Of a DNA stretch of 64,000 nucleotides, positions 22,124-62,401 are shown in pieces. This DNA is from Macrostomum lignano (lineage: Eukaryota). The notes beneath the pieces were generated by a model. The model worked only from the letters and a program-made list of their open reading frames with translations. It made no database searches and was not told the origin of the DNA. A program made the translations under genes and the position numbers. The stretch covers positions 362,360 through 426,359 of the forward strand of contig NIVC01000861.1 of NCBI GenBank assembly GCA_002269645.1. The letters run 5' to 3'. Position 1 is the stretch's first letter. Each line of letters starts with the position of its first letter.

Positions 22124-23809
22124 TTAGGCGATGGTATTTGCCTGAGCTGGAGCAGCCTGTCGGTTCATCTCTGCCAGCATTTTGATCTCCTGCTCGCAAA
22201 ATCTCTGACCGAACAGAGTAGCCGAGATGGCCTGAGTCACTGCAGCATTGAGCTGAAAGACACCCAGAGCCAACACTTCGGCCATTTGACGCGAACGCTT
22301 CGGGTCGTAGCAGGCATTGTTGGGCCAGAGAGTGTTCTCCAGGTAGTTGCGGCACAGCGGGTCGCAGCCGGTCCGAGAGAAGCACTTGTTGGCGGCCATT
22401 TCAGAATAAACTCGTTTCGGCATGTCACCGTTTCGCATGGCGGTGATGTTGCAACCCCTCTCAACTTGGGGAGTGATGCCGCTCTCCACCCAGCACCGGT
22501 TGATTCCAGATTCAGCGACACAGTGTCCGAGCTTGTCATGGTTACTTTGGGCTACATTGTTCGGATAATAGTATATCAAAGCGAAACACATTTCATCTCT
22601 GGCGCCTTCTCCAAGGAAGATGGTAACATTGCTTTTTAGTGTGCTGTAGTAGCATTCGGTCTTTACTTCGTCACCTTTCCGGTATTCGATCGGTGGGTCG
22701 AAAGTGTGCACCTTCGGGGATTTGAAATCGTACACTTGAAGAGGAGACAGGTCTTTAATCATAGTTCCGTTTCTCCACAGCGAGATGCGTCCTTTAATGC
22801 CATAAGCGTGCATGTGAATGAGTACGGCGGTGATGTAGCGAGTCTCATTGTGGTACCAGTTAGTGCACACCGAAGGGCACGTGTGGTTCACGCTGATCAA
22901 CGGCTGTCGCGGTGGAAGAACAAGATTTATCTCGCCATACATAAGAGTTCCCAAGTCGTATGGTCGAAGGTTTTGTGCAAAGTAAAGAGCGAAGCCAGAA
23001 GCATCTGTGTAGTTAGAAATCCTCATCGGGTTGTTCCAGTGAAGCTGCAAAACTCCGTACCGAATACCCTCACCGCCAAATCGGAATCCCGCATTGCTAT
23101 TGATGCACTCGCCTTCGAGTCCGTAGGTCCAGAGGTTCATCAACTCAGTGCAGTTTCCAATGGGCATGAAACACGGTTGTGAATTATTAAAAAGCGTCTC
23201 TGCGGGCTTGACACTACAGACATACATAATCATGTGGTGCATGATGCTCTTGTTGTCAATGATTGGCCTCGATCCGATCAGGTGAACCGGAGAGGCAGTG
23301 TTGTTCAGCTCGAACGCCTGACAGATGTACGTTGTCTCTCTCGCAGGCACGGGAGTCGGTTTGAGGGTGAAGTTTCTCACGAAAACACCGGGCTCTTCGA
23401 ATGCTGGACAGCTGAAGGCCTTCGGACACACGGTCCACGAGTTCTTGCACGTCGCGGAGTCGAGCGGGCAGATGCCAGGGTGGGACAGTCCAGTCGTTCT
23501 CGACGGAGCCGCACCGACCTTCCACACGCAGTCGGGGTCTCCGAGCTCTTGGCCGTTCGTGAGTCCGTCGCCATCCGAGTCCTTGCGGCACAGGTCGACC
23601 GTCCACTGGAGCCCGGCCGCCTTGAAGTCCAAGCCGAAGGGGTTTCTCGCGTTAGCGCCGGCGGGACTCTGGTGTCCGACTCCGGCCCAGATGGCGCCTG
23701 GCTGGCACGGATTCGGGACGCGATCGCCGTTCGGGATTCGGGACTGGAAAATTTTGTGTGCGTGAGAGCAGCTGAGCAGTGCGGCCAGAGCCACAGAAAG
23801 CAGCAGCAT
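22124..23809 (-). CDS. Temptin-domain copper type II monooxygenase, copy 2, no C-terminal anchor (predicted secreted), 561 aa
   Basis: Intact single ORF with signal peptide, temptin domain, HHM, LHWNN, HMH, DEMC. Confidence 0.93.
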   Translation of the reverse strand: MLLLSVALAALLSCSHAHKIFQSRIPNGDRVPNPCQPGAIWAGVGHQSPAGANARNPFGLDFKAAGLQWTVDLCRKDSDGDGLTNGQELGDPDCVWKVGAAPSRTTGLSHPGICPLDSATCKNSWTVCPKAFSCPAFEEPGVFVRNFTLKPTPVPARETTYICQAFELNNTASPVHLIGSRPIIDNKSIMHHMIMYVCSVKPAETLFNNSQPCFMPIGNCTELMNLWTYGLEGECINSNAGFRFGGEGIRYGVLQLHWNNPMRISNYTDASGFALYFAQNLRPYDLGTLMYGEINLVLPPRQPLISVNHTCPSVCTNWYHNETRYITAVLIHMHAYGIKGRISLWRNGTMIKDLSPLQVYDFKSPKVHTFDPPIEYRKGDEVKTECYYSTLKSNVTIFLGEGARDEMCFALIYYYPNNVAQSNHDKLGHCVAESGINRCWVESGITPQVERGCNITAMRNGDMPKRVYSEMAANKCFSRTGCDPLCRNYLENTLWPNNACYDPKRSRQMAEVLALGVFQLNAAVTQAISATLFGQRFCEQEIKMLAEMNRQAAPAQANTIA

Positions 23810-24536
23810 TATGGTATACTAATTCGCTCGTGTATATCCGGATATAAATGCGTAATGCGTAACTTAATAGTATTTAGATGGAGGTCAATGATCTCTAATC
23901 TCTCTAAGACAGAAACCAAAAGAAGAATTTCTGTGCGGAAAGAGGGAGGTAGACAGAAACAGCTGTTTTAATATGGATACTCGTAATAAGAGGTGGGTAG
24001 TCAGCAGTAGTTTGGGCAGTCAGCAAGCATGTTTCAAGTTTGTCCTTCAACCCATTGCCCAGTGTATTGGGTTTGTATGGGGGTGGAACTGCACCAGGAA
24101 GAGCAGTGGTGTAAGAAGAAAGAGATTCACATTTTACTGGCCTCCTAGTAGTCTAACTTAGAGTAATGGCATTGCAACGCCTGCGTGAGCCCAGAGCTGC
24201 TTTTCTAGCATGCGTTGGAGGGCTACGGAAGAGTAGGAAACCATTCGGCAGCCGGATAAGCATCGATTTTTTCTAGTAGACTGGCATAATGCGTGTGACA
24301 GATAAACTCATTCAAGTTGGGGAATATGCTTGTGCGCATGCGTGGAACGTGCGTTATGAATTTCGGGCCAAGAAATTATTTTACCTATTCATTCGGTCCT
24401 GCGCCTCTGGATGAATAACTTCAATTAATCTATATTAAAAAAAGAGTTCAGCAAATTTTTGTTGCTCACGTTGCTCATTCGCGTGTCACATCTTCTTCGT
24501 TAGGACCTGCCCGTAGGACCTGGAGCTGACCCTCGA

Positions 24537-24900
24537 CTACGATGTGACCCGGCGACATATCAAAGCTTCGCAGACTTGGGGTTCTAATGATGAGAGGCTC
24601 AAGAAGATCTACCAAAAGGAAAAATCGCCAGAATTACCACCAACCATAAAGTTTCGACTCTCGCAGTTACGCACGGGACACTGTCGCCTCACTAACTACT
24701 GAAGTCAGATAGTGGGGCTGGCGCCCCCGAGCCTTTCCCCGAATGCGGGAGTACTGAAGACAAAGATCACTGGTTCCTGTGCCCTAAGTGAGACTGGCTT
24801 CGGCGAGATCTCGATGCGCACTTGCTTGAGGACTTAAGTAATGAAGACTTGGTGTTAAGAATCCTTCGGTCAGCCAAACCCGGAGTGGCTCTGGTCGGGG
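24537..24900 (+). mobile_element. LINE ORF2 3' relic (C-terminal zinc knuckle); second copy at 41220-41590
   Basis: LSQLRTGHCRLTNYW...PECGSTEDKDHWFLCPK, followed by a CA-rich tail. Confidence 0.6.
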
Positions 24901-26013
24901 ACTCGTTCCGACGACACACACACACACAGTAGCGGCAGCGCCTGTGAAAACAGCAGTGCCAACAGCAGCACCTACGGCGGCACCAGCAGCAGCGTCAAAA
25001 GCGGTACCAGCGGCCGGGACCTACACCTGCGAGGTGCGAACCTATGTCGCGCCCATTAGACGGCGACCGAAATTCGCGCCGGCCGCAGACTCATGGATGT
25101 CACAATTCTTTGCATCCCAATCGATCTTACCCTCCTGCAAGCTTCACCAAGAGCATCTGTGAAGTGGCGGCTGCTTAACGTGGCTCGTCTACGAAAACAA
25201 ACTGCCAGCGGACTGCGCCGCGACGAGCACCCGAATGATTGTGGAATGCCAGCATCACACGTGCTGCGGCCTGTCGACACGCTTCAACAAGCTGCTGGCC
25301 GTCGTCAACCTCACCTCGCTCAGCCACATCGGCGCTGAGAGAGCTTGCAACCTTAATTCGCAAGAGGATGGGCCGCTTGACTGTCCGTCCGGTCACAACG
25401 TCGATTGCGATCAAAGACCCCGCTTCAAAAGCCTCTCTTTTAAGTCCTAGCCTGGCGTAGCAGCAGGCCGTCAACAACAGCAGCACAAGCTAGAGCTGCT
25501 AGGGACCTGGACCGACTTCCGACAACGAGCGCACGTCTCTTCCTCGGGTCCGGCTCGCAGCTGATAGCAGCAACGTGATCTTTGACACCTTGCTGGACGT
25601 CACAATTTGTTAGAATTTACGAGCGTACATTCACTCTATAACTACTGATTTAGCTTGCAATATCCTGCCCCTGCCGCCTTTTCCTTGCCGCTTTTTCTAC
25701 ATTTGAATTTTGCCGCGCTTATTAATCCTTAAATGCTTGTGTTTTTTTTAGCATTCAATGTTCGATCTACATGTAAGTCTCTAATGGAACCAATAACTTA
25801 ACTTTTAAATATTGAAGTCCAACTTTGCGATGACGTGCGTACACAAGCTGTTACGCTCGTCATTTTCTTACATTCTAAACACAATAATCATTTCATTTAC
25901 AGACGCTATACATTACTATTTTTTAGACTCTTGATCGCCCAGCTACTTCAATAAAAGTTTTTTCGCTAGTAAACATTACAATAATATAGTAGATTTTTAT
26001 TTTATACAATGTG

Positions 26014-27232
26014 ATGTAACCATGCTTTGGTCGCGGGGTCTGGTGGGGGGAATTTTTTAAAAGTACCTCCGACCTCCGTGCTTCTACGGGGCAGAGCTGT
26101 CGAGACTGGGCCGGGTCCCTGACTAGGCCAACTGACTCCCGCTCTGCTGCATCCCCCTGCTGTCTCGGTTCCGTCTCCCACTCAGCCACACGTGCCTTTC
26201 CGGAGCCCCCTTTTCTTTCTGCATCTCCCCCGCCTCCCGTTTCCCATGCGCCCCCCCCAACTATCATGTACTTCTCCTGCTTCCCATCTTTTTGTCACGT
26301 TTTGGCCTGTTTTTCTTGCGCTGTCTCCTTCCTACCCCGTGCTTACTTACAGTACTTCTTGTGCTCACGATCACCCCATCTCCTTTTAGAATCCCAAACG
26401 GTGACGCAAGGCTTCTGACTCCTCCTTCGCCCTGATGACTCATCACCCCTCTTGCGCAACCTTTTCTCATGCTATTTCTCTCTGCTCAGAATTTCTCATG
26501 CGACACCCACCCCTCCTCCGCTCCTATTATTCTTGTTTTTTATTCTTTTGTTCTCTTTTCACATTGTAATTATCACATTTTCCCAGATTTTCTCTTTCGA
26601 TTGTTCTCATTTTCGCACCTAACTAGCACCTTTTCTTAAATGTTTACTTTTCTATTGTTCTCAGTTCTCCCTAATTATCCCAGATTTCCATTTCCTTTGT
26701 TCTCGGCCTGAGTCTCATTGTTCTCAGTGTTTTCTTACGCAACGCTTTCTCGACCCCCTGCTGTGCTCATTATCCCCCCACCCCTCCTCCGGATTGCGCA
26801 ATTTTCTCATTTCTTATGTTGCTATGCCGTTCTCATGCTTCTCATCATGACTCATTCTGACGTAATTTCGCCAGCAGCCAATCAGAGAGAGGGAGTCATG
26901 GAAACGACCTTGGAACGGCAGCCGTGAGGACTATTTAAGGAAGCGATTTTCGGCGTGAGAACCCTCAGCTCTTGTGTCTCGTCTCCGAAGTGGTCCTTCC
27001 TTGGACTTGCTGTCAGACGCCGATCTGACCCCCCATTCGTCTATAGGACGCCCGCGGTCTGAATACCGCCAAGTTCCCTTAGCTCCCCAAGCGAGCTCAT
27101 CTGCCGGCCCGCGGTCTGACACCACCCAGCATCCTCAGCATCGCCTGAGCTACATCAGCGCCTTGTCGCTTCAGCGCATCGCCGCTTCACTACCTGCCTG
27201 TCTGCAGCCAACAGCCGCCCTCGGTCACTCCA

Positions 27233-27286
<54 letters not shown>

Positions 27287-28273
27287 CAGCTGCCGGTAAG
27301 TTTCTGTTACTAATTTGTGCTCTAATTGCCTTTGCTTATCCGGGGTTTGATTGTTTGCCATTTCTTGATTAGAGAGCTGAGCCAATTGTACACCGTATTT
27401 TTGCTGTATTTATTCAATAGTGAAGCCGCCTAATTGCATGTGTATTTCGCCTAACGGCCTAATTATTAACCATTACTGAACTCCTCATTTTTCACACTTT
27501 CACCATCATTTAATCCATGGCTTGCTAAGCCTTGCTCCTTGGGTGGCAAAGCATAAGGAAGTTTGGGTAAGCTAATGGCCTCTTCCCGTGCAAAGCCCGC
27601 CTGTGTGTGCGTGCTGCGGTTTCGTGTGTGTGGGCAGTAGAGGGAAGTAGCGGGTCACGGCACAGAATGGCAGCAGGAAGGTTGCAACCCCATGCTTACG
27701 CGTCCCTTCGCCCTGAGCAATCTAAACTATAGCTAGCACATGTTCATCTCACACTACTCTTAGTAATCGTGGTCGCAAGTCCGCCTCAATCACAGCCACA
27801 TAGGATCCCCTGCTGAGAAATCCTCCAGATTGATCCCAGAGTTCCTGATTGAGCCCAAAGCAGAGTCCCTGTACTCGGCTGCATGCGTCTCCCCTGTTAG
27901 CTTAAATCCCCTGGTAACCAATCCAGGCGGGGCTCTAGCCTCGAAAGGTCTGGTCAAGATCTAGGTGCGCCAGGTCTTATAGAGTGGTGGCAGCCACTTG
28001 GTTATACCATGGCCGAGTGACCAATTTACGCAACTTGGCTACAGGCAGAGTCCATGTGGGTACTTGGCCCTCTGGTCACGAAAGCGCTACCAAAGCTATC
28101 AATCATATGGTGCTGGAGGTCCGTCAGGCCATTGCCAGGTCATCGGCAGCCTACGGTCATTGCCCCCTATGGTCAGTTGCTCTCCTCCCCGCTGAGCAGA
28201 CGGTCATAAATCAAATGAATTTTGAAAAGTTCCATCGCCAGTTATTTTTTGTGGTCGTCGCGTAATCCGGTAC
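26014..28273 (+). mobile_element. Possible solo-LTR-like insertion
   Basis: TGTAAC...GGTACA ends, gtga/ttga near-TSD, internal TATTTAA, (CT)n at 27235-27282; no coding evidence. Confidence 0.3.
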
Positions 28274-29004
28274 ATTGAGCATTCGCTCGCGAGTACTGGC
28301 GTGAGCTGATATGTTTAATCTCTAGTTGCTATAACTTGGGTTACCCTCAACAAATAGCATGCAACACTCGCGGTTTAACTTCTAGTGGTCCTTGCTTGGA
28401 GAGCGGGCGACTTCAAGTATTGAATTCAGCTGTTGCATTACTGGTCAGGGGATTATGTTAGATCTTAAGAAGTGTTTCAGTATGCCTGTTGTATAGAAAA
28501 ATAGCCCCAGCAGTGTACAATTAAAAAGTCGGAACACTCGAGCAAAGAGATGCTCAGTATTGCTCAAAGTTTAGCTTAAAAATATTAAGTTATAATAATT
28601 GACATTGTTAATTTTGCATGCCCTACGAGTCGTACATGTAAATGCATTCCTTCTTGTACAGGTAGCTTTGATTCTTAATTATGCTAATGCTGTTTATTAT
28701 ACTCAGTAGTAAGGGTTAGCAGAACATGGCTGACAGGGCGCAGATAGGAGGCAATGTTATGCATTGCGATAGGAGGAGGCCGCCTATCTCTCAACATAGA
28801 GACAGTTAACACTGTAGAGATAGGAGGAGAGGCGGGCTTAGTCGAATGAATGCTAAATTTTTCCTAAAGAGCCAATCAGGGAGCCTGGAGTAGGGTGGGT
28901 GGTTTTTGGAGGGTTGGTCGAGTGTACATGTATATAAGCCGTAAAAGTCGTATACAAGCCGGAGAGAAAGAATATGTTTTGTCCTGTGAAGGCTATAAGG
29001 CACA

Positions 29005-29880
29005 AGTCCAGGACTTTGAAGCCATCCTGGAGGCTGATGAGGACACAAACACCATCTTGAAGGACACGAGGACACGAAGCCCATCCTGGAAGCTGATGAG
29101 GATACGAAGCCCATCCTGAAGGCTGATGAGGACGCGAGGACACGAAGCCCATCCTGGAAGCTGATGAGGATACGAAGCCCATCCTGGAGGCTGATGAGGA
29201 TACGAAGCCCATCCTGGAAGCTGATGAGGATACGAGGACATGAAGGAGGACACGAAGCCTATACTGGAGGCTGATGAGGACACGAAGCCCATCCTGGAGG
29301 CTGATGAGGACACGAAGCCCATCCTGAAGGCTGATGAGGACACGAAGCCTATTCTGGAAGCTGATGAGGACACGAAGCCTATTCTGGAAGCTGATGACAA
29401 CACGAAGCCTATTCTGGAAGCTGATGACAACACGAAGCCTATTCTGGAGGCTGATGAGGACACGAAGCCTATTCTGGAGGCTGATGAGGACACGAAGTCC
29501 ATCCTGGAGGCTGATGAGGACACGAAGCATATCCTGGAGGCTGATTAGGACACGAGGATATGAAGGTGAACACGAAGCCTATACTGGAGGCTGATGAGGA
29601 CACGAAGCCTATCCTGTAGGCTGATGAGGACACGAGGATATGAAGGTGGACACGAAGCCTATACTGGAGGTTGATGAGGACACGAAGCCCATCCTGGAGG
29701 CTGATGAGGACACGAAGCCCACCCTGGAGGCCGATAAGGACACGAAGCATATCCTGGAGGCTCATGAGGACACGAGGACATGAAGGAGGACACGAAGCCT
29801 ATACTGGAGGCTGATGAGGACACGAAGCCCATCCTGGAGGCTGATGAGGACACGAAGCCCATTTTGGAGGCTGATGAGGG
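29005..29880. repeat. 30-bp minisatellite (translates as KPILEADEDT repeats, with stops)
   Basis: Unit gctgatgaggacacgaagcccatcctggag with recurring spacer variants. Confidence 0.92.
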
Positions 29881-30169
29881 CGGAGAGCATGCTGATGATG
29901 ATGCTTTTAGATCGCCCACAACTGTCACAAAGCCAGGCATCAATACACCGATACCTCCGATTGATTCTGATGCCTGGCTGCTTCCGTAGCGGGACACTAA
30001 CCTTGAGGAAGATCCGATGTGGTATCAGTTAAGGGCGCATGCAGCGGCTTCGACGGTGAGCGGCAGCAGGAAGCGAAAGCTGCCATTTTAACTTCCTTCA
30101 GGCAGGACGCAATGAGGCTTCCAAGTGTTCGACAACAACAACAACAAAATACGCGGCCCTGCAAGCAAA

Positions 30170-31075
30170 AGGTTAGATGGCGCGCCGCAGAGCCTGGGAG
30201 CGAACAAAGTCCGCTCCGTTGGCAGTGTCGGGCGCCCCAGCGTCGCACAGCAGGCAGTCCACGTATCGACGGGTTCGGGCCTGACCCTGCCTGAACGGAC
30301 CCTGCAAGGTGGGAAGCAGGACGTCCTGAACAGGTTGGGGGCAGTAGCCCTCGGCCCGGATCACGTGGCCCGCCAGTTGACGTCGCCGCCGGCGCAGGGT
30401 GGTGGACGGGCGCTGCAGCTTGGCCCGATCGTACAAGGCATCGGTCCCGACGCTCTCATCAGCTCGGAAAACCCCACGGAGCAGCCCTGAGTGCGTCAAG
30501 TCCAGCTGCCGCTCTAGCGTAGCCGTCAGCGTCCACGTCTCAGCGTTGTATAACAGGATGGTTTCGACCACCGCCTGCCACAGCCGAGCCCTCTGACGGT
30601 CGGGCAGCGCTTCGGACTGGAGAACGGTTCAGATCAAACGAAAGCCGCCCAGGCAAGTCCTCTGCGCCGCCGGAGGTCTTCGTCCACGTGAGGCACCAGA
30701 CCACCGAATTAGGTGAACCGCTGGCAGCGTGCGAGCCTGGTCGTCTGCCCTTCTGCGCCGCGGCACGTCAGGTCCGCTGGGATGTCGGCCGGCACAGTAA
30801 GCACCTCGTCTTCAGCGTGTTGACGATCAGACCAACGCTCGATGCCACCTCTACCAGCCTGTCGATCTGGCGCTGGGTACCTTTAACGGGTGAGGACAGG
30901 AGGGCGAGGTCGTCGGCGTAGCCAAGCACGCTTAGGCGCTTTTCGCCGTGGCGGCGACAGATGCGTCTGCGCGGCAGGAAGCCGTCATTAGCCGAGGGGA
31001 GTGCGGTCCGAAGCACCCAGTCCAGCAGCAGCACGAAGAGGAACGGCGCTAGCATGTCGCCAGCAGCACTGGCGA
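30170..31075 (-). mobile_element. RTE-like LINE reverse-transcriptase 3' fragment
   Basis: LAPFLFVLLLDWVL, LGYADDLALL, VETILLYNAETWTLT, RRRRQLAGHVIR; frameshifted. Confidence 0.85.
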
Positions 31076-31175
31076 CAGCAGCACAAAAACACCAGCAGCA
31101 CTTCTTGCAATCACCATACTGACATGGAATCCAGCTCAAAGCTGGAATACAGTGCAATCTCTAACGGACGAGTGA

Positions 31176-31330
31176 GTGGCTGTGCGAATGCACAGGTTTC
31201 CAGCGGACGACGGAGTTGCGAATCGATGGCGGCAAATGCTGGAAATCAACTTGGACATCGGAGCCATTCGCAAGATGGGATTGCGAGTGTGCAGTGTGCT
31301 TTTTACTGATAATTATTACAGCTGTCCTTT
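31176..31330 (+). mobile_element. THAP-domain fragment (P-element-like)
   Basis: MHRFPADDGVANRW...LRVCSVLF; a possible transposase C-terminal piece (YVGGYVLK..C..C) lies at ~31760-32000. Confidence 0.55.
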
Positions 31331-32039
31331 GCGACATGAAGATATACGACACGTTTACGGTGGATTGCCGTTCCAGACATTGCCGCCACAGGCTGGAAAA
31401 AAGCAGGCAATGCGAACAGCCAACAGCTCAGCTAACTAAGGCCATGCCAAACAACGAAGCAATAACAACATTGCAGCGCAGCACAACGGTTTTAACGACA
31501 GACCAGAGCTCAGCTCCTTCGTCCGTGCCCTGCGGCCCGTGGCTGCCAGCGGCCTGGTCGAGCCTGACTCGACATCCCGCAACTGCGAAGACGACAACTG
31601 CAATGCTGCCATCACAGCAGCATGCGCCCCCCACCGGTGACGGAGACTGCGTGACTACCAATACGGGTCCACCGAACTACAAGCAGTGTTGCACGCCAGG
31701 CACCACAGCAGCAGCTGCTCCAAGAAAAGCTGGACTCCTTGCAGAATGCCAGCAAATGCCTCGCTGGAAGCTGCTGAGTACGTTGGCGGGTATGTGCTAA
31801 AGCGAAGCAGAGTTCTTCACTGTCAGCTGTGCAACTATTTGCTTACTCTTTGCTTACAACATCCACACCTGCGAGGGCTCACATTCAGCACAAGACCTCC
31901 TCACGTGCATCCCGTGGGTTGACTGCGCCCTCGCCGGTGGCGCTTGTTGCATTTATGAAGATGGAGGCCGCGCTCGCATTCGCAGCCCTGACAACTACGT
32001 GTTTCGGAGGTTGTTCACGTAGGTTGTGAACTACTGTGT

Positions 32040-32610
32040 TTCGTCGGTCCCTTCGCGAGGATGACAGCTACTTGCTGATCCCACGCCGAAGCTCCAGACA
32101 TCCTGCTGTTTCGCTTCCCGCTCTCGCGTACGCAGACGACATCGCGCTGCTCTGCCGCGATCCAGCTGCTGCCCAGCGCGCTCTCAGAAAGCTTTGCGAC
32201 GAGGGCGCCCGTGTTGGGCTGCTGGTGAACGCTCGCAAGACGGAGGCGCTGCATGTGGGCATAAATACCGCCCCAACTCTCAGGAACGTCTTCAGTTGAG
32301 GTGTCAGAGACGACCTGAAGGTGTGCCTATTTCGCGCGGCCGTAAAGACGATCCTCGTATACCGCATGGAGGCTGTGCCGCTGACCGAGACGCGAGAGCA
32401 AGCCCTTGACGGGCTCTACCGATCGCTGCTGCACTACGCGCTGGGCGTGCACTACCCGGAGCGCCTGCCGACCAACGTTCTGATTGCCCGTGCCGGAGCT
32501 CCGCGCTAACTGAGCGCTACCCTGCGCCGGCGCCGACAGATGCTGCTGGGCCACTGCCTACGGACCCTGGGCCGCGGCGAGCCTGTCCCTCTGGCCCTGT
32601 CCCTGCTACT
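32040..32610 (+). mobile_element. Second RTE-like LINE RT fragment
   Basis: LAYADDIALL, GLLVNARKTE, LFRAAVKTILVY, LRRRRQMLLGH. Confidence 0.8.
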
Positions 32611-32619
32611 ACAAATATA

Positions 32620-33340
32620 CTCTCAGGTGCATTGACATGCTGTCAAAATGTTCTTGGGCCAAGGCATTGAAAAACAAATCTGCTGCAGAAGTGAAGTCGG
32701 CATTCGAGAGCATATTGAGAAGCTCAAAGCGCCAGCCACGCACAGGGCGCACAGCGCACAGATCAGGGGAAGAAGAGTTCAACAACTCTACTTTCTGGCA
32801 GTTCTGCATGGACGGAGGAATTCTGGCCTTCCCAATCAAAAGTGAGCAGAGGGCGGCTGTCATTGAGCGGTGGAATGCTGGACACTGCACTGGCTTGATG
32901 TGCTGCTTAGCTAGTGAAGTCTTACAACATACCTATCACAAAAGAATCATAATGGCACCCACTAGTGTCTGCAAAGAGAATGAATCTGGAGTGTGTATGA
33001 ACCTGTATGACGGGACTTTGAAGAAACTGAGGGAGCCGAAGTCTTTTGAAAACCAACCCGTTAGGATTTCTAATGCACCCAGACTGTTCAGAAAGGGGTA
33101 CAAAGCCAATTGAAGCGATAAGTGTACACTGTGATATCCACGGCTCCAAAGCATGATCCCTTCATGTACGAGATTAAAGACCTGCGGGGGAAGATATTCG
33201 AGGACTCTTCCATGAGCAAGAGCTGCAGGCTGCCCCGGACACAAGTCGCAGGGAAGGGAAACATTCGCTATCTGGTGAAGTGGGCTGGCTACGACTCGAC
33301 TGGTTGGGTGGATGAGAAAGACTTAAGAAAAATGTAGCTG
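32620..33340 (+). mobile_element. Degraded Polinton/Maverick-type integrase with C-terminal chromodomain
   Basis: DMLSKCSWAKALKNKSAAEVKSAFESIL, AAVIERWN, VRISNAPRLFRKGYKAN, VYTV...MYEIKDL.G, YLVKWAGYDSTGWVDEKDL. Confidence 0.65.
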
Positions 33341-34265
33341 ATTACTGCAACCGACATTATTCATTCAATTTCATTATATAGCAGTCAGCATGCTGAAAGT
33401 ACTCCTTGTGACTTTCATTTTCACTTGCATTTACCTGCATAGGAAGACTGCCAAAGGTATACAGAAGGCTGCTTTAAGAAGCTGGCTGTAACAGTCAGAC
33501 CCGAAGGCTCCTACTGTGTTGGAAGACAAAAGAGCCTGAATTTCGCCGAATGTCCGACTTCCGTTCGGCCATGTCAATCTGAGCCTTCATTCCAAAGGCA
33601 GGACGATGAGGAAGCGCGTGTCAAGCCCACCTAGTCTATCCAACTAATCAATTAGCTCGTTTAAATCGATGATCGATGATGACTAATGATTACAAGTACT
33701 GCATGGTTTTCAACTGAATCAGAATACCCTCACTGCTTGTTCTGTTGGTGTAGGCAATCATGTCTTCTTATTAGCGAATTTTAAATTTCATCAATTACTT
33801 TACAAAAAACCTCTGCTGCTTTAAGTTCTTTGTCGACTGCTTTAGCTAGCTTGTATTTTTACTTGTATCTGGCAGGCCAGAGCGTGTCGAAATAAGGGCG
33901 AAACCACAGAATACACCAGAATATATAAATCCTTCAGGCTTCACGCTTCGCGGCCCTCGGATTCTCCTCCTTTTTGCCCTAGATAACCTGCTGGATTTGT
34001 ATTCCTTCTTGATTTTGCGGGCGGGCCGAGAAACGACATTCTTCGGCCCGCGAGTCAAACTGCATTTGCTTCAGTCTAAGTTCAGTGCAAGTCCTGATTC
34101 TCGGCCCGCAAGAGAATGGAATTTGTCTATGGCACAAAATGCAAACTGTATTTCATTTTAGCTCTGAGCCTAAAAGAGCGACTGACAAAGTAATACGCTC
34201 GTAATTAGTCTAACTTTTTATTAAAACTGAATTTCATTAACTCCTGACCCGAGCGTTCTGAGAAC

Positions 34266-34700
34266 ATGATAGACTACTCCTGTATAGAAGGAGGCGAGAT
34301 TTCTGGGTTGCAGCGCGAAGAAATCGACTTTGTATGCCAACTCCGTGGCCGTGGGCGAATGTTTAATCAGTACACTGGCTTGCCTGTGCCTGGAATTGGA
34401 GTCAGCAAGGCGCTCGACAACGGCCTGTTGGATGATCTAGTAAACGATCTTTCTGCTGAAGCGAGCAGCGACAATCAACTCCGGGAGCTAACAAGTGATG
34501 AAGTGAGCGCCATTTTGGATGTGGAGAATGCCTCACGCGTCGTCTCTACCGGAGCAAAAACAAGACAGTGTGTGGAGAAATTCTGATACTGACTGCGAAC
34601 AAAGGGACTTTAATGGAGTTCTGCCGACTGCAGTGCTAGAGAAAAATGGATCCCGTGTTCTATTTTTCCTATAAGTGAGTATCTCTGAACGCCATGTACT
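34266..34700 (+). mobile_element. Degraded ORF, probable Crypton/DUF3504-type tyrosine-recombinase N-terminus (paralog A)
   Basis: Homologous to 36950-37298 (EI.GL..EE.DFV..L, Q.TGL, LRELTS); GAKTRQCVEKF resembles the T..T...V..F motif. Confidence 0.4.
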
Positions 34701-35369
34701 GTAAAGACGGCGTGGGTTGCACCACAAGACTATATTAAATCGTTACTGTTGTCCTCTTTGTAATGTTGCACTTTTAACGTTTTAAATACAATCGTTCCGG
34801 CTTCGTCTATGGCCCAGCCCGATATCGGGCAGAGAATGGGCCATTTCTTAAGCAGTCTTGCCCGCAAAATCAAGCAGGAATGCTCAATCAGCTTCCAAAT
34901 CGAAAGCCAAAATATAAAACCATAGACACTACTCCTGAGGTGAAGAAGAGATAAGTAGTACTGAAAGTTGAGAAGTAGTCACCTTTTTGTACGTTCATTC
35001 GAGGGGGAACATTTTTATGGACAGAAGGTCCCGATTGTATATTTGCAGCTGTAGCGACATGAAAATGTAGATTTTAATTGTGAACATTCAACGCAAACTA
35101 GAACAGTTTAAAAGCAGCAGTTTAAGCAGAAGTTTAAGCGATTAGGGTACGTGATATAGCCGTACATGAAAATTTAGCATGAAAGTTGCAAATTAGAACA
35201 GTTTAAAAGGAGCAGTATGAGCAGCAGTTTAAGCCTCAAACAACAGGCAACCTATACTTTAGCGGCTAACGGGTGTCGCAGCTTTCGTTGTTCTGCTGAA
35301 GCTGTACTCGTACTGTGAGCTCCGCACTTTTTCGCAGCTCGAAGTAATACCTGTCGAGCTTTGCACCAG

Positions 35370-35820
35370 TGATTTAAACGCAGGCGTGTGTACAAAGATG
35401 AGAGAGATGAAAGCCATTCCTTTGTGTGCTCACTGTTGTGTAGATTCCAGGCTGGCGCATGCAAGTTCCGATTTTTCGTCTAATCGTCATTATTGATGGA
35501 AGCCGTAAACCAATGCTACGCAAGTATCGGTGGCATCTGGGGCTGTAGTGAAGCAGCCCTGTGGCAAGACGTAGAGAAGCCCTCGACCAGACAGGTCTCC
35601 GGCGTTTCGCATTTGAGATCTGATCCTGAATCACACCACGAACCGTTTCACTCATGCTTGCGATCTGAGCACAGACGCTGTTGTGCTGGGCCAGATTTCT
35701 AAGCCTGGTAGCAGTCAAACTTGAAGTGTCGCATCGCCGTTTTAGAGTATCATTTTGGCATCTCAGTTGTGCTGAAGTGTTTCTCTCGGCCTTGAGTTTC
35801 TGCCTTAGCTGCTGCATGGT
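35370..35820 (-). mobile_element. P-element/THAP9-like transposase fragment
   Basis: WSRASLRLATGLLHYSPRCHRYLRSIGLRLPSIMTIRRKI...PG. Confidence 0.7.
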
Positions 35821-36949
35821 CGCAACTCTTCGACTTCAGCTTCGACGGTAGGCTTGGGTAAGGGCACAGTAATCGGCAACTAAGCTGAGTTATTATACAC
35901 TAGGCATTAAATAGATAGGATAGATGGACGGAAAGACAAGCGAAAAACATCGTCTATGGCAAAATCGATCTCAATGCACTCGGGCTGATGAAAAAAGCCA
36001 GCACTACTCACAGATCACTTCACCTTAGAAGTAGCGTAGCCAAGGAATACTTAACAACTCAGGACGTTACACTCGCGATTGATAGAAATTCTAGAAAAGG
36101 CCGCTTGCTTTAGCTGTTTCTATGGCTTTTCAATAAGCTTTTTCGATAAAGAAGCAAGTGCTAACCTATCTAGTGGTAGGTGCTCATAAACTGTTCGCTA
36201 TATATATATTTTTTACGAATATAACAATTAATAAATACAAATATAGTCGGTACAAGAAGTACATTACAATTAAAGAGTAGGATATGCAACTGATGGAACT
36301 CTGTATACAACTGTATAAGGCAAAATAGATCCAGATGAACATAAAGATGTTTAAAAGAGACATTCAGCAGCATTCATTGGCATTTTGAACAAAAAGAACG
36401 TGTGATAAGAATTTGGACGAAAAACAAAAATTGTTGCTTCACTTTGTTTAAACCTTGCACTGAGAGTATGAGAGTTTGTTAGTGAAAAGGCTTCATTGCC
36501 ATAGACACAGTGGAGCAAGCGGCCTTTTCTAGAAGTTCTACCATTCGCGAGTGTAACGTTCTGAGTTGTTAAGTAGTCCTTAAACGTAGCTAGTGAACAG
36601 TTTTTGCCTCAAAAAAATTTCGCAGGGAGCTTGATTGAGCATTCTGGTGTATTCTGTGGGCGAAACCAACGATATTTGCCCGCGGCCAATATCTATGGCC
36701 AAACCAAATAGCATATAGTCTTTATATTTGACTCTCTTTCAAAACAAGAGGTGAGTAAACAAGCAGAATCAATTTCCAAAATAACAGATTAAAACAAAAC
36801 GTGAGCTAATAAATCATTGTCTCAAAAATGCTAAAAGTTGAGTCTGCTCGATTAGACACTCACTAGCTTGTTAGGGTGATGCTGAAGGTGCAGTTTTCGA
36901 TCTTGCAGTTGTGCTTTGCCAACTGGATTGCTAATGGCTATCATGCAGT

Positions 36950-37298
36950 TCGAAACAGAATTTGAACCAGCATCGGATGCTATCAATGTCAGTTGGCATT
37001 CCCTCTATCAGAAACTTTTTGAACCGTCGACTGCTTGGCGGTAGAATTTCGCTTGCTATCCTCCTCTACCTGTCGCAGAAGATCTTGTTGTTCAGAGGTC
37101 AACTCACGCAACAGAAATGTCAACGTTGGTTGGATCACGGAGTTCCTCGTCGTTGAGGCGTTCCTGGTTCTCAGTAAGGCCCGTCCATTGGCCGGTTGGG
37201 ACGGTATCCTCGCGGTTTACAAGACGAACGACAAAATCCAACTCATCGCCAGTCAAACCGTCTATTTCGTTTTTGCGTATTCTGTCGTAGCGCAACAT
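36950..37298 (-). mobile_element. Degraded paralog B of the 34266 ORF
   Basis: EIDGLTGDELDFVVRL, GQWTGL, and LRELTSEQQ after a frameshift. Confidence 0.4.
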
Positions 37299-38029
37299 GA
37301 TGCAAAAACAAGAAAATACTATAGATAAAGTGAAGAAATAATCGAGGAATGCAGACTAATATATACAAATAGTAGGACAACTTCGTAGGAAGGTATTTGT
37401 ACCATAGACAGTGACAGCGGGCGCGAAATAAAGTCAATCTATAGAAGTGAAGGTGTTTTTGTCATAGACAGTTGCAGCGGGCGCGAAATATCATTTTTCG
37501 TGCCCGCTATAGTTGCTGGCTCTGTTATGCCATAATACTAATATGGATGGGCTGCTACGGGTAGAAATGAGCGAATCGGCCTCCGCGCGTACGCTTGTCA
37601 AATCTTCACTTTCTGTTTAAAATGGTTATGGGCGTAGATAGATAGATAGTTTCCTAGATAGGCAAATTTGTATTGCGGCAATAGTAAAAGTGCGACCGCT
37701 ATTTTCGTCACTTGTGCGAAAAAAAGCCGACATGGCTTGCTTAAATTTTGAGTTCAGTAGCTTAAGGACATAGACGCCTAACTGATTGTTCTGACTATGG
37801 ATTTGAGGGCAGGAATGAGCGAATCCGAGGGATTCAGCTCATTCATGCCTGAAAATCCATAGTCAGAACTATTTTGTTTCACGATTGGCCATAGACTAAA
37901 ACAGCGGGCACGGAATCTGCCGTCTTGCCCGCGAAATCGTGAGACAACATAAGCTAAAAGCTACTCAATCAAGCTAAGAATGATGCATGCACTGCAGGGA
38001 CTACTGACGAAGTTGAGTTCAGTAGTTGA

Positions 38030-38530
38030 TTATCACGCTGTCGCGAGTTGCAGTATTTTTCACACTGGAGATTGCCCCCAGTCGCTACTATTCCAACTAT
38101 GGATCCGCCGGGTGGCTCCAGGAAAATAAGGCTAAACTTCATCTGGCCCCAGCTGTACCAGGTGGCCGCCTCAGACTCAGCACGATGAACTGCCAAACTC
38201 TGAAGGCCCCCTGGCATCATCCTTGTCCAGCTGGCCCACGACCTACAGCTGAACCTCATCATGCTGCAGGAGGTTTCTATCGTGGCTGAGCCGGGGCTCC
38301 AATCTGAGAACCTCGGAGCCGGCTGGAGCCTCCTGGACAAATCGGCAGACGACCGTGGCCACGGCGGTGTCGGCGTACAGTTCGGACCGCGCCTTCGGCA
38401 GAGCGTGCACTGCACTTCGCTGTCCCCTCGAGTCGCGACTGATGCGGGTCGACCTGCGCCTGCACGTCCGCTGCATTCGGCTGCTCTGCGCGCATACACC
38501 GACCCCAAGGAGGCTCCTGCAAATTTTCCT
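38030..38530 (+). mobile_element. LINE apurinic-endonuclease fragment
   Basis: LRLSTMNCQTL, LIMLQEVS, GHGGVGV; frameshifted. Confidence 0.7.
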
Positions 38531-38817
38531 AGGAATTCTAGCGTGAATTCTCGTTGGCAAGGCTGAAATACTCAACTAGTTAAAGTGTTATGCCCGACAC
38601 AAAAAAAAATTTATAAAACAATTTATTCAATTTTACACAAGATCCAAGCTAACCTTTAAAAAGTAAGATACTCCCCCACCAGTTAAGCGTAAACCAGTCA
38701 AATGTTTTATAAACCGCAACCAAAAAGTAACACTTGGTTCGACTGCACGGACCAATGACTTAGTGTCAGTTTTTCAACTTGAATTTCACAACTATTTGCA
38801 AGGCAGGTGTTCGGAGG

Positions 38818-40503
38818 TTAGGCGATGGTATTTGCCTGAGCTGGAGCAGCCTGTCGGTTCATCTCTGCCAGCATTTTGATCTCCTGCTCGCAAAATCTCT
38901 GACCGAACAGAGTAGCCGAGATGGCCTGAGTCACTGCCGCATTGAGCTGAAAGACACCCAGAGCCAACACTTCGGCCATTTGACGCGAACGCTTCGGGTC
39001 GTAGCAGGCATTGTTGGGCCAGAGAGTGTTCTCCAGGTAGTTGCGGCACAGCGGGTCGCAGCCGGTCCGAGAGAAGCACTTGTTGGCGGCCATTTCAGAA
39101 TAAACTCGTTTCGGCATGTCACCGTTTCGCATGGCGGTGATGTTGCAACCCCTCTCAACTTGGGGAGTGATGCCGCTCTCCACCCAGCACTGGTTGATTC
39201 CAGACACTGCGACACAGTGTCCGAGCTTGTCATGGTTAGTTTGGGCTACATTGTTCGGATAGTAGTATACAAATGCGGCGCACATTTCATCTCTGGCGCT
39301 TTCCCCAAGGAAGATGGTAACGTTGGTTTTTAGTGTGCTGTAGTAGCATTCGGTCTTTACTTCGTCACCTTTCCGGTATTCAATCGGTGGGTCGAACTTT
39401 TGCAACTTCGGAGATTTGAAATCGTATACTTGAAGAGGAGACAGGTCTTTAATCATAGTTCCGTTTCTCCACAACGAGATGCGTCCTTTAATGCCATAGG
39501 TGTGCATGTGAATGAATGCTGCGGTGATGTAGCGAGTCTCAGTGTGATACCGGTTCGTGCACACCGAAGGGCACGTGTGGTTCACGCTGATCAACGGCTG
39601 TCGCGGTGGAAGAACGAGATTTATCTCGCCATACATAAGAGTTCCCAAGTCGTATGGTCGCAGGTTTTGTGTAAAGTAAAGAGCAAAGCCAGAAGCGTCG
39701 GTGTAGCCTGAATGTTTCATCGGGTTGTTCCAGTGAAGCTGCAAAACTCCGTACCGAAGGCCATCACCGCCGATTCGGAACCCCGCGTTGCTGTTGATGC
39801 ACTCACCTTCAAGTCCGTAGGCCCAGAGGTTTAGCAACTCAGTGCAGTTTCCACTCGGAAACAATTGACACTTTTGTGGACTATTGAAAAGTGTCTCTGC
39901 GGGTTTTGCAGTACAGGCATACATAATCATGTGGTGCATGACCTTGTTGTCAATGATTGGCCTCGATCCGATCAGGTGAACCGGAGAGGCAGTGTTGTTC
40001 AACTCGAACGCCTGACAGATGTACGTTGTCTCTCTCGCAGGCACGGGAGTCGGTTTGAGGGTGAAGTTCCTGACGGTCACGTTGACACTGTCAAGTGCTG
40101 GACAGCTGAAGGCCTTCGGACACACGGTCCACGAGTTCTTGCACGTCGCGGAGTCGAGCGGGCAGATGCCAGGGTGGGACAGTCCAGTCGTTCTCGCCGG
40201 AGCTGCTCCGACCTTCCACACGCAGTCGGGGTCTCCGAGCTCTTGGCCGTTCGTGAGTCCGTCGCCGTCTGAGTCCTTGCGGCACAGGTCGATCGTCCAC
40301 TGGAGCCCGGCCGCCTTGAAGTCCAAGCCGAAGGGGTTTCTCGCGTTAGCGCCGGCGGGACTCTGGTGACCGACTCCGGCCCAGATGGCGCCTGGCTGGC
40401 ACGGATTCGGGACGCGATCGCCGTTCGGGATTCGGGACTGGAAAATTTTGTGTGCGTGAGAGCAGCTGAGCAGTGTGGCCAGAGCCACAGGAAGCAGCAG
40501 CAT
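38818..40503 (-). CDS. Temptin-domain copper type II monooxygenase, copy 3, predicted secreted, 561 aa
   Basis: Intact ORF with all six Cu ligands. Confidence 0.93.
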   Translation of the reverse strand: MLLLPVALATLLSCSHAHKIFQSRIPNGDRVPNPCQPGAIWAGVGHQSPAGANARNPFGLDFKAAGLQWTIDLCRKDSDGDGLTNGQELGDPDCVWKVGAAPARTTGLSHPGICPLDSATCKNSWTVCPKAFSCPALDSVNVTVRNFTLKPTPVPARETTYICQAFELNNTASPVHLIGSRPIIDNKVMHHMIMYACTAKPAETLFNSPQKCQLFPSGNCTELLNLWAYGLEGECINSNAGFRIGGDGLRYGVLQLHWNNPMKHSGYTDASGFALYFTQNLRPYDLGTLMYGEINLVLPPRQPLISVNHTCPSVCTNRYHTETRYITAAFIHMHTYGIKGRISLWRNGTMIKDLSPLQVYDFKSPKLQKFDPPIEYRKGDEVKTECYYSTLKTNVTIFLGESARDEMCAAFVYYYPNNVAQTNHDKLGHCVAVSGINQCWVESGITPQVERGCNITAMRNGDMPKRVYSEMAANKCFSRTGCDPLCRNYLENTLWPNNACYDPKRSRQMAEVLALGVFQLNAAVTQAISATLFGQRFCEQEIKMLAEMNRQAAPAQANTIA

Positions 40504-44201: not shown

Positions 44202-44450
44202 GTAGCCTAGATGGGGGATTGAAGCCGGGTGCTTAGAGCGTCGGACTCACGACTTGAAGGTCGACTTGGAATAATTAGTGTCCTTGAGCAAGACACTTGA
44301 CTCTGCATTGCCTCAGTTCACTCAGCTGTAAAATGAGTGCCAGAATTAGCTGGGGTAATTGAGGGTGTGTGTGGTGACTCCCCAGACCTTGGACTGAACA
44401 GCCGTACGCAGCCTACAGTTAGCTGCAGTAGCTGCGGCTGAGCTGTCGGT
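44202..44450 (+). mobile_element. SINE copy C (rearranged head, partial)
   Basis: Shares ttagagcgtcggactcacgacttgaaggtc and the CORE-like body. Confidence 0.8.
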
Positions 44451-62337: not shown

Positions 62338-62401
62338 AAGATGCGTGGAAAAGAATGAACGACAGAGCCGCAAATCTGCAGCTTTGAACCCGACCCGAAT
62401 C

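What the first reader, a model, noticed from the sequence alone, without database searches (positions are those of the whole stretch)
22500..40100. Inverted conservation: copies 2 and 3 are more alike in non-coding flanks than in the copper-domain coding region
Manual comparison gives ~7 differences in ~730 bp of upstream non-coding DNA, 0 amino-acid differences in the last ~120 residues and 4 in the first 136. In contrast there are ~43 differences in residues ~137-438 (22500-23400 vs 39195-40095). Changes crowd around the Cu ligands: TAVLIHMHAY vs TAAFIHMHTY, GEGARDEMCFALI vs GESARDEMCAAFV, NPMRISNY vs NPMKHSGY. Inference: positive selection on the substrate cleft, or replacement of the catalytic segment by conversion from other paralogs.
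Basis: partly seen in the sequence, partly recalled or inferred. Interest (0 to 1): 0.8.

Follow-up and report, generated by a model that had tools for sequence, protein, structure and literature searches.

The report
Gene-conversion mosaic in flatworm copper-monooxygenase paralogs
Two neighbouring copies of a flatworm copper-enzyme gene look nearly identical at their ends and in flanking DNA but differ in the middle, because old duplicates have been patched by copy-and-paste recombination (gene conversion), an ordinary process in tandem gene families.

Summary
Between copies B (22124-23809, -) and C (38818-40503, -), the proximal upstream 731 bp has 4 substitutions and 3 indels. Codons 1-136 differ at 4 aa, codons 137-438 at 43 aa (93 nt, 10.3%), and codons 439-561 at 0 aa.

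The window is the last 64 kb of Macrostomum lignano contig NIVC01000861.1. It holds six intronless paralogs with a Temptin domain fused to a PHM/DBH-like copper monooxygenase.

The divergent core is not explained by positive selection:
- Synonymous divergence rises with nonsynonymous divergence (dS 0.245 in the core against 0.05 and 0.01 at the ends; omega 0.32).
- Synonymous and nonsynonymous differences co-cluster (rho 0.84).
- 59 of 103 differing sites carry both states in other paralogs.
- Recombination tests are significant.

Beyond the 96-100% block, B/C homology continues collinearly at only about 70%. B and C are therefore old duplicates whose ends were secondarily homogenised. The core is a patchwork that includes an exact 154-nt tract shared with inverted paralog A.

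The three residues equivalent to PHM's substrate contacts (R240, N316, Y318) all differ between B and C. Functional divergence, perhaps selection against homogenisation, therefore stays open but unproven.

This is a new example of a known process.

The parts
22124..23809 (-). Copy B ('copy 2'). Intact intronless ORF of 561 aa: signal peptide, Temptin_C, Cu2_monooxygen N and C domains, Cys-rich C-terminal domain, no TM tail.
   Evidence: Pfam 1.9e-38, 6.7e-22, 7.7e-18. AF2 model pLDDT 87.8. Foldseek top hits are DBH 4zel and PHM.
38818..40503 (-). Copy C ('copy 3'). Intact 561-aa ORF with the same architecture. Relative to B it has a 1-codon deletion (B codon 188, 3 residues before the CuH His pair) and a 1-codon insertion (C codons 212-217 region).
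21998..25383 (-). B side of the high-identity B/C block: 1.57 kb upstream, the CDS, and about 126-135 nt of 3' flank. The C side is 38692-42082.
38692..42082 (-). C side of the high-identity B/C block.
22510..23402 (-). Divergent core in B (codons ~137-434, the catalytic domains). The C equivalent is 39204-40096. Divergent patches lie at about B-CDS nt 409-435, 562-830, 946-1010, 1092-1107 and 1178-1313, separated by 98-100% stretches.
   Evidence: Maximum chi-square scan. Sliding identity. Site list.
23346..23499 (-). Conversion tract in B that is 154/154 nt identical to inverted paralog A. It creates the 16 B/C differences of codons 137-145 ('AFEEPGVFV' vs 'ALDSVNVTV').
   Evidence: Exact string identity. 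It covers 49 consecutive polymorphic sites, permutation p = 2e-4. A and B are about 80% identical overall.
14097..14250 (+). Partner of that tract in paralog A, the likely donor. B is C/D-like on both sides of the tract.
21998..22496 (-). Recent 3' B/C conversion tract, from codon ~438 through the stop to about +126 nt. It has 1 difference in 499 nt. The C side is 38692-39190.
   Evidence: B = C differs from B1 at 20 sites and B = B1 differs from C at 0 sites in this tract.
25505..25982 (-). Old, unhomogenised upstream homology of B and C: 71% identity to 42085-42539. Further collinear blocks are 28213-28280 vs 42620-42687 (77%) and 28339-28571 vs 43490-43697 (70%).
21879..21989 (-). Old downstream homology, about 72% identical to C 38577-38683. 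It lies inside 3' flank also shared with D at 69.7% (21711-22123 vs 46067-46462).
22577..22585 (-). B codons 409-411 (F-A-L) after the CuM Met in DEMC. They align to PHM N316-L317-Y318. C has A-A-F (39271-39279).
   Evidence: HMMER alignment to PHM. Paralog alignment. PHM substrate contacts from PMC12164859.
22820..22822 (-). B codon 330 (Leu), two residues before the CuM HxH. It aligns to PHM R240. C has Phe (39514-39516), D Leu, E Thr, A and F Gly.
13775..15592 (+). Paralog A (605 aa, TM tail), in inverted orientation. Partner of the 154-nt tract shared with B.
46463..48148 (-). Paralog D. Same length as B and C but with TAC>TAA at codon 161 (47666-47668). Conversion partner of both B and C.
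55636..57561 (-). Paralog E (641 aa, TM tail).
62399..64000 (+). Paralog F. It runs off the contig end and is the most divergent copy.

Best explanation
B and C are old tandem duplicates in a six-copy array of intronless Temptin + PHM/DBH-like copper monooxygenase genes in Macrostomum lignano. Their neutral divergence is about 0.3, as seen in the outer flanks. Interlocus (ectopic) gene conversion later homogenised two blocks between them. One block is the 1.57-kb upstream region plus the 5' CDS. The other is the 3' CDS plus about 130 nt of 3' flank. The catalytic core was homogenised only in patches and also exchanged short tracts with other paralogs (A, D and unsampled copies).

The non-coding flanks have no homologous partner other than each other, so they stay alike. 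The core has several diverged partners, so it is a mosaic. That is why conservation looks 'inverted'.

Shown: the mosaic, the tract boundaries, the old baseline divergence, and the matching rise of dS.

Inferred: the direction and order of the events, and whether the core's partial escape from homogenisation is chance, reflects a homology threshold for conversion, or reflects selection.
For: (1) Synonymous divergence follows the pattern. B-C dS is 0.052, 0.245 and 0.012 for codons 1-136, 137-438 and 439-561. dN is 0.013, 0.077 and 0. Core omega is 0.32.

(2) Synonymous and nonsynonymous differences co-cluster in 20-codon windows (Spearman 0.84, p = 5e-5).

(3) At 59 of 103 B/C differing sites, both states occur in other paralogs.

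(4) The PHI test gives p <= 0.0005 for three sets of paralogs. Run-length permutation tests are significant for many pairs.

(5) The nearest neighbour switches along the gene. B matches A at 100% over nt 331-450. C matches D at 96-100% over nt 661-870. B matches D at 97-98% over nt 901-1080. B and A share an exact 154-nt tract although they are 80% identical overall.

(6) Identity drops abruptly from 96-100% to about 70% inside collinear homology at both ends. Upstream: 25505-25982 vs 42085-42539, with further collinear blocks out to 28571/43697. Downstream: inside 3' flank that B also shares with D at 69.7%. The core dS of 0.245 is therefore close to the baseline age of the duplicates.

(7) In the 3' tract, B agrees with C against its own allele or homeolog B1 at 20 sites, and with B1 against C at none. 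This points to an event after the B/B1 split. In the core, B agrees with B1 against C at 77 sites.

(8) The whole family shows the same behaviour. CDS nt 181-296 is 97-99% identical even between F and the others, which are otherwise 50-70% identical.

(9) GC3 is higher in the homogenised ends (0.77 and 0.67) than in the core (0.58) in B, C and D, but flat in F. This fits GC-biased conversion but is only suggestive.
Against: - 25 B-unique and 19 C-unique sites have no donor among the sampled paralogs. Unsampled copies are assumed as donors.
- C-unique changes are 15 nonsynonymous to 4 synonymous (omega about 1; Fisher p = 0.019 against shared sites). Conversion alone does not predict this.
- All three equivalents of PHM's substrate-contact residues differ between B and C. 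This hints that selection shapes which tracts persist.
- No second copy of C could be retrieved, so C's sequence rests on one contig of a polyploid, repeat-rich assembly.
- The permutation tests do not model variation in constraint along the gene.
Confidence: 0.8

Rival explanations
1. Diversifying or positive selection on the substrate cleft is the main driver. B and C have different substrates. Selection either fixed new cleft residues or removes convertants that homogenise the core, leaving an 'island of divergence' in which linked silent sites also stay diverged.
For: - B/C differences include the equivalents of all three PHM substrate contacts: L330F (R240), F409A (N316) and L411F (Y318). 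With 43 of 302 core positions variable, three named positions would all vary about 0.3% of the time. This is a post hoc calculation.
- Amino-acid changes are mildly enriched within 8 residues of a Cu ligand: 15 against 9.3 expected, p = 0.02.
- C-unique changes are 15 nonsynonymous to 4 synonymous.
- Omega among the young paralogs (about 0.3) exceeds omega against F (about 0.1).
Against: - Omega is 0.32 in the core. It is 0.39 near the ligands and 0.29 far from them, with identical dS.
- Nonsynonymous changes never cluster without synonymous ones.
- Several divergent patches are imports with identifiable partners.
- Variable positions tend to be the ones that also vary across the wider family (entropy 2.40 vs 1.97, p = 0.03).
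- B and C carry no gene model on their own contig, and C has odd changes at conserved positions. Relaxed constraint is therefore an equally good reading of the nonsynonymous excess.
Confidence: 0.15
2. B and C are a young 3.4-kb segmental duplicate with about 2-4% divergence. Their whole core was once identical and was later overwritten piecemeal by conversion from older paralogs. The roughly 70% sequences outside the block are unrelated older repeats.
For: - Stretches of 98-100% identity lie inside the core between the divergent patches.
- Partners are identifiable for several patches.
- Part of B's upstream region (26008-26544) is a dispersed repeat also found in L003.
Against: - The roughly 70% homology outside the block is collinear on both sides and continues in three ordered blocks upstream.
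- The 3' boundary lies inside flank sequence shared by B, C and D. It is therefore a recombination boundary and not a duplication boundary.
- This rival still relies on gene conversion, so it changes only the order of events.
Confidence: 0.15
3. Assembly or polishing artefact. Reads from different paralogs or subgenomes of the hidden-polyploid M. lignano genome were mixed, producing chimeric consensus patches.
For: - The contig shows small indel discrepancies with two near-identical contigs in paralog F close to its end.
- The assembly contains redundant haplotigs or homeologs.
- C has no independent copy in the data I could reach.
Against: - A separate contig (NIVC01003975.1, locus L001; 97.9% identical over 15 kb) carries B1. 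B1 is an intact ORF that shares the A-derived tract and the 'RISNY' cluster, and agrees with B against C at 77 core sites.
- The patches are 20-270 nt long, far shorter than a long-read mis-join would produce.
- Differences are substitutions and in-frame 3-nt indels, and both ORFs stay open.
Confidence: 0.05

Closest known systems
Interlocus (ectopic) gene conversion and concerted evolution in tandem gene families, with partial escape of some segments (for example globin, RHD/RHCE and opsin arrays, and the Teshima-Innan models of divergence under conversion). These examples are cited from general knowledge.
   Same: - Mosaic tracts of tens to hundreds of nt.
- Abrupt identity boundaries inside older homology.
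- Polymorphisms shared across paralogs.
- dS that varies along the gene.
- Pseudogene members (D) taking part as partners.
- Exchange between inverted copies (A and B).
   Different: Nothing in kind. The less common detail is that the homogenised tract extends 1.57 kb into non-coding upstream DNA, while the enzyme core is the least homogenised part.
Dopamine beta-hydroxylase / MOXD1 / tyramine beta-hydroxylase (copper type II ascorbate-dependent monooxygenases; PDB 4ZEL)
   Same: - Best sequence match (E = 8e-27) and best structural match (Foldseek E = 1.5e-26).
- Both Cu sites are conserved: H191, H192, H257; H332, H334, M407.
- Secretory-pathway protein, soluble or with a TM anchor.
   Different: - The N-terminal DOMON domain is replaced by a Temptin_C domain.
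- The C-terminal Cys-rich region differs.
- About 24-26% identity.
- Substrate unknown.
Peptidylglycine alpha-hydroxylating monooxygenase (PHM; PDB 1PHM, 1OPM)
   Same: Two-domain catalytic core and the same Cu ligands.
   Different: The carboxylate-anchoring R240 is Leu, Phe, Thr or Gly here. N316 and Y318 are Phe/Ala/Leu and Leu/Phe. Binding of a peptidyl-glycine substrate in the PHM manner is therefore unlikely.
Lophotrochozoan 'Temptin' / 'DBH-like' fusion proteins (molluscs, brachiopod, annelid), named only by automatic annotation
   Same: Same three-Pfam architecture in all 120 listed homologs, at 35-46% identity.
   Different: The M. lignano copies are intronless, tandemly amplified and undergoing concerted evolution. 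I found no functional study of the family.

Membership tests
Copper type II ascorbate-dependent monooxygenase (PHM/DBH) family | Both catalytic domains present (Pfam Cu2_monooxygen and Cu2_monoox_C above gathering score) | tested here: met
   B scores 78.5 and 64.9 bits, C 79.0 and 66.8 bits. The cut-offs are 30 and 23.
Copper type II ascorbate-dependent monooxygenase (PHM/DBH) family | CuH ligands (His-His ... His) and CuM ligands (His-x-His ... Met) conserved | tested here: met
   B has H191, H192, H257, H332, H334 and M407, aligned to PHM H107, H108, H172, H242, H244 and M314. Also met in C, D, E and F. In A the first CuM His is Tyr (IYMH, 14780-14782).
Copper type II ascorbate-dependent monooxygenase (PHM/DBH) family | PHM/DBH two-beta-sandwich fold | tested here: met
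   AF2 model pLDDT 87.8, pTM 0.83. Foldseek hits: 4zel E = 1.5e-26 and 30 PHM entries with E down to 1.5e-20.
Copper type II ascorbate-dependent monooxygenase (PHM/DBH) family | Copper- and ascorbate-dependent hydroxylase activity | not testable with these tools
   Needs expression and an enzyme assay.
PHM subtype (peptidylglycine hydroxylase) | Substrate carboxylate anchor Arg240 with Asn316 and Tyr318 | tested here: not met
   The aligned residues are L/F/L in B, F/A/F in C, L/F/F in D, T/L/F in E, and G/L/F in A and F. The roles of these residues are from PMC12164859.
DBH/MOXD1 subtype | N-terminal DOMON domain | tested here: not met
   Pfam finds Temptin_C (131 bits) at residues 16-113 and no DOMON domain.
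Interlocus gene conversion / concerted evolution | Statistically supported mosaic ancestry among paralogs | tested here: met
   PHI p <= 0.0005. Run-length tests p = 2e-4 to 2e-3 for 11 of 15 pairs. Nearest-neighbour switching.
Interlocus gene conversion / concerted evolution | Tract boundaries inside older collinear homology, with silent-site divergence stepping at the boundary | tested here: met
   Identity falls from 96-100% to about 70% at 25383/42082 and about 21990/38684. dS is 0.012-0.05 in the ends and 0.245 in the core.
Interlocus gene conversion / concerted evolution | Identifiable donor for each divergent patch | tested here: inconclusive
   Partners were found for the A-B tract (154 nt exact), for C-D (nt 661-870) and for B-D (nt 901-1080). 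44 B- or C-unique sites have no sampled donor.
Positive (diversifying) selection on the catalytic cleft | dN/dS > 1 in the region or around the active site | tested here: not met
   Omega is 0.32 in the core, 0.39 within 8 residues of a ligand and 0.29 elsewhere.
Positive (diversifying) selection on the catalytic cleft | Excess of nonsynonymous change independent of synonymous change | tested here: not met
   Synonymous and nonsynonymous counts per window correlate at rho 0.84. The exception is the C-unique class at 15N:4S, which is inconclusive.
Positive (diversifying) selection on the catalytic cleft | Site-specific omega > 1 under recombination-aware codon models, and 3-D clustering at the cleft | not tested
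   No codon-model software was available and no model coordinates are returned. Only the alignment-based mapping to PHM contacts was possible.

The most novel reading that the evidence does not exclude
The catalytic cores of the soluble paralogs B, C and D are kept different by selection against homogenising conversion, because each has a different substrate pocket. The PHM R240/N316/Y318 equivalents are L/F/L in B, F/A/F in C and L/F/F in D. On this reading the array is a rapidly diversifying set of secreted copper hydroxylases acting on different small molecules or peptides, for example in chemical communication or reproduction, in a flatworm.
Probability: 0.2. Interest if true: 0.55.

Novelty: new member of a known kind. 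Interest (0 to 1): 0.3.

Why it matters
The result is mainly a caution. In tandem families, 'flanks more conserved than coding sequence' and clusters of amino-acid changes near an active site can arise from gene conversion alone. Naive dN/dS or site models on such genes would mislead.

It also documents a lophotrochozoan enzyme family for which I found no functional study. The family fuses a Temptin domain to a PHM/DBH-like copper monooxygenase. In Macrostomum lignano it is an intronless six-copy array with birth-and-death features. The positions that vary among the youngest copies are exactly those that bind substrate in PHM. That gives a concrete three-residue hypothesis for specificity that ordinary enzymology could test.

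Tried and rejected
- Exact-product look-ups for B, C and the 160-aa N-terminal ORF of D found nothing. No independent copy of C could be obtained.
- Look-ups for A and E showed that the window is the last 64 kb of NIVC01000861.1. L001, L003 and L004 are therefore other contigs of the same assembly, not a second assembly.
- Literature searches for the M. lignano locus tags returned nothing. The search for Macrostomum with temptin returned nothing relevant: 'temptin' appears to match the word 'tempting'. The search for gene conversion in M. lignano also returned nothing relevant.
- Variable residues are not significantly enriched in loops over strands of the AF2 model (p = 0.24).
- Omega near the ligands does not differ meaningfully from omega elsewhere.
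- True 3-D mapping of variable sites was not possible, because the structure tool returns no coordinates. I used the HMMER alignment to PHM instead.
- I considered that the 71% upstream match was an independent transposon insertion. I rejected this because two further collinear blocks follow it. The adjacent 26008-26544 is a dispersed repeat lying inside a B-specific insertion.
- The first search already showed that no database protein is more than 85% identical to B.

Full report
**What is there**

The window is eukaryotic. It equals the last 64 kb of contig NIVC01000861.1 of the Macrostomum lignano assembly GCA_002269645.1. Loci fetched with the window's own A and E proteins are exact substrings of it.

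The window carries six intronless paralogs:
- A: 13775-15592 (+)
- B: 22124-23809 (-)
- C: 38818-40503 (-)
- D: 46463-48148 (-), with TAC>TAA at codon 161
- E: 55636-57561 (-)
- F: 62399 to the contig end (+)

Each encodes a signal peptide, a Temptin_C domain, the two domains of a copper type II ascorbate-dependent monooxygenase, and a Cys-rich C-terminal region. A, E and F also have a TM tail.

B matches human DBH (E = 8e-27) and rat PHM (E = 1.3e-14) by sequence. An AlphaFold model of B (pLDDT 87.8) hits DBH and PHM structures first. The copper ligands are conserved: H191, H192 and H257, then H332, H334 and M407.

Homologs with the same three-domain architecture occur across molluscs and in a brachiopod and an annelid. 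I found no functional study of the family.

**Checking the observation**

Every count reproduces. In the B/C alignment:

| Segment | Differences |
|---|---|
| Proximal upstream, 731 bp | 4 substitutions + 3 indels |
| Codons 1-136 | 9 nt, 4 aa |
| Codons 137-438 | 93 substitutions + two in-frame 3-nt indels, 43 aa |
| Codons 439-561 | 1 nt, 0 aa |

A maximum chi-square scan of the block picks 23402-22510. It has 92 differences in 890 nt, against 51 in 2490 nt outside. None of 300 permutations reached this value.

Two qualifications apply:
- The core is patchy. Windows of 98-100% identity alternate with windows of 77-88%.
- The alike flanks are only the proximal ones (see 'The flanks are the anomaly' below).

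**Why positive selection does not explain it**

Nei-Gojobori estimates for B against C give dS of 0.052, 0.245 and 0.012 for the 5' end, the core and the 3' end. dN is 0.013, 0.077 and 0. Core omega is 0.32.

The silent sites therefore carry the same signal as the replacement sites. The segments differ in age, not in selective regime.

Three further results point the same way:
- Synonymous and nonsynonymous differences co-cluster in 20-codon windows (rho 0.84).
- Omega within 8 residues of a copper ligand is 0.39, against 0.29 elsewhere, with equal dS.
- Positions that vary between B and C tend to be those that also vary across the wider family.

**Evidence for a gene-conversion mosaic**

- At 59 of 103 B/C differing sites, both states are present in other paralogs.
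- The PHI test gives p <= 0.0005 for three sets of paralogs.
- Run-length permutation tests are significant for most pairs.
- The nearest neighbour changes along the gene:
  - B is 100% identical to A over nt 331-450.
  - C is 96-100% identical to D over nt 661-870.
  - B is 97-98% identical to D over nt 901-1080.
  - B is unlike all sampled copies over about nt 660-810. There it shares several states only with F, which suggests an unsampled donor.

The A-B tract is an exact 154-nt identity (14097-14250 against the reverse complement of 23346-23499). The two genes are 80% identical overall. This tract alone makes the 16 differences of codons 137-145. It therefore creates the apparent coincidence between the start of the divergent region and the Temptin/catalytic domain junction.

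The same behaviour is family-wide. CDS nt 181-296 is 97-99% identical even between F and the others.

**The flanks are the anomaly**

Upstream of the 96-99% block, homology between B and C continues in the same order and orientation, but at much lower identity:
- 25505-25982 vs 42085-42539: 71%
- 28213-28280 vs 42620-42687: 77%
- 28339-28571 vs 43490-43697: 70%

Lineage-specific insertions lie between these blocks.

Downstream, B and C differ at only 4 positions, all at its outer edge, in the first ~134 nt after the stop. They then drop to about 70%. The drop lies inside 3' flank that B also shares with D at 69.7%.

B, C and D are therefore old duplicates with neutral divergence near 0.3. That is about the same as the core dS. 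The high-identity ends are secondary homogenisation.

A separate contig (L001, NIVC01003975.1) is 97.9% identical to the window over 15 kb. It carries B1, an allelic or homeologous copy of B with an intact ORF. Three-way comparison of B, B1 and C gives:
- In the 3' tract, B agrees with C against B1 at 20 sites and never with B1 against C. This points to an event after the B/B1 split.
- In the core, B agrees with B1 against C at 77 sites. This shows that most of the mosaic is older, and that it is not an artefact of assembling this one contig.

GC3 is higher in the homogenised ends than in the core in B, C and D, but not in F. This fits GC-biased conversion but is weak evidence.

**What remains for selection**

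The HMMER alignment to PHM places B L330, F409 and L411 at PHM R240, N316 and Y318. A review names those three residues as the substrate contacts (PMC12164859).

C has F, A and F at these positions. D has L, F, F. E has T, L, F. A and F have G, L, F. So all three pocket positions differ between B and C.

None of the copies keeps the arginine that anchors a peptide carboxylate in PHM. These enzymes are unlikely to bind a peptidyl-glycine substrate in the PHM manner.

Changes unique to C are 15 nonsynonymous to 4 synonymous, giving omega of about 1 (Fisher p = 0.019 against shared sites). This could mean adaptive change or relaxed constraint. Three points favour neither reading decisively:
- C has a codon deletion next to the CuH His pair and M215L at a nearly invariant position.
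- D is already a pseudogene.
- On this contig, B carries no gene model and no called product matches C. The B1 copy is called only as a 136-aa fragment.

Selection against homogenisation of the core is compatible with the data but not demonstrated.

**Verdict**

The first (positive selection) is not supported as the cause.

The mechanism is ordinary concerted evolution in a tandem array, so novelty is low. The modest interest lies in the uncharacterised enzyme family and the three-residue specificity hypothesis.

**Limits**

- There is no independent copy of C.
- No reads were available.
- No recombination-aware codon models could be run.
- No 3-D coordinates were available for mapping variable sites.

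Noticed in passing
window 47666-47668 (paralog D, codon 161): D has TAC>TAA at the conserved Tyr that aligns to PHM Y79. Otherwise its frame is full length and open. It looks like a young pseudogene that still exchanges tracts with B and C.
   Followed up: partly
window 63722, 63738, 63837, 63896, 63910 (paralog F, near the contig end): There are five small indels relative to two other contigs (L003, L004). Those contigs agree with each other and encode an intact 650-aa protein (P0004). The indels are probably consensus errors at the contig end and not a real pseudogene. Conversely, the L003 copy of E has a 1-nt deletion at the equivalent of window 55863 that truncates it to 577 aa.
   Followed up: partly
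window 14780-14782 (paralog A, residue 336): A and its copy A1 have Tyr in place of the first His of the CuM His-x-His motif (IYMH). A may not bind CuM normally, yet it keeps an intact 605-aa ORF and shares an exact 154-nt tract with B.
   Followed up: no
window CDS nt 181-296 of all paralogs (e.g. B 23514-23629; F about 62590-62710): The second half of the Temptin domain is 97-99% identical at the DNA level among all six paralogs. This includes F, which is 50-70% identical elsewhere. It is a family-wide conversion tract or conversion hot spot.
   Followed up: partly
L002 (NIVC01000362.1) 10001-11923: This is a dispersed, intact copy of E (P0001, 640 aa). It is 97.3% identical to E over the CDS, with a different signal-peptide region and unrelated flanks (neighbours LRAT, DUF1907, RPS4). 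The intronless gene family has also spread outside the array.
   Followed up: no
window 506-1788, 2533-2853, 6404-7448, 9177-10052, 29018-29879, 61140-61356: There are large minisatellite arrays with units of 21, 24, 21, 20, 30 and 21 bp and up to 50 copies. They generate long spurious ORFs on both strands. A gene model with a PHO4 hit (505 aa) is called at locus positions 1-4203 of L006, which correspond to window 3775-7977. That span includes the 6404-7448 minisatellite.
   Followed up: no
window 35374-35817 (-) and 60368-60964 (-): There are transposase remnants between the paralogs: a weak P-element HTH match (E = 1e-3) and a THAP domain (E = 4e-13). A short inverted-repeat element occurs at 4291-4582 and 5225-5511, with copies at 44214-44450 and 48882-49175.
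   Followed up: no
window 26008-26544 vs L003 1-549: A dispersed repeat (75% identity) lies inside a roughly 2.2-kb B-specific insertion in the old upstream homology. In L003 it sits next to a 1058-bp insertion relative to window ~54226. These are structural differences between near-identical contigs.
   Followed up: partly
window 23810-24540, with C 40504-41226 and L001 20033-20760: The proximal 731 bp upstream of B is 99.2-99.7% identical among B, C and B1. The next 330 bp is 3.3-4.3% diverged in all three pairs. This may be a constrained promoter or 5'UTR, or a separate and more recent conversion tract.
   Followed up: partly
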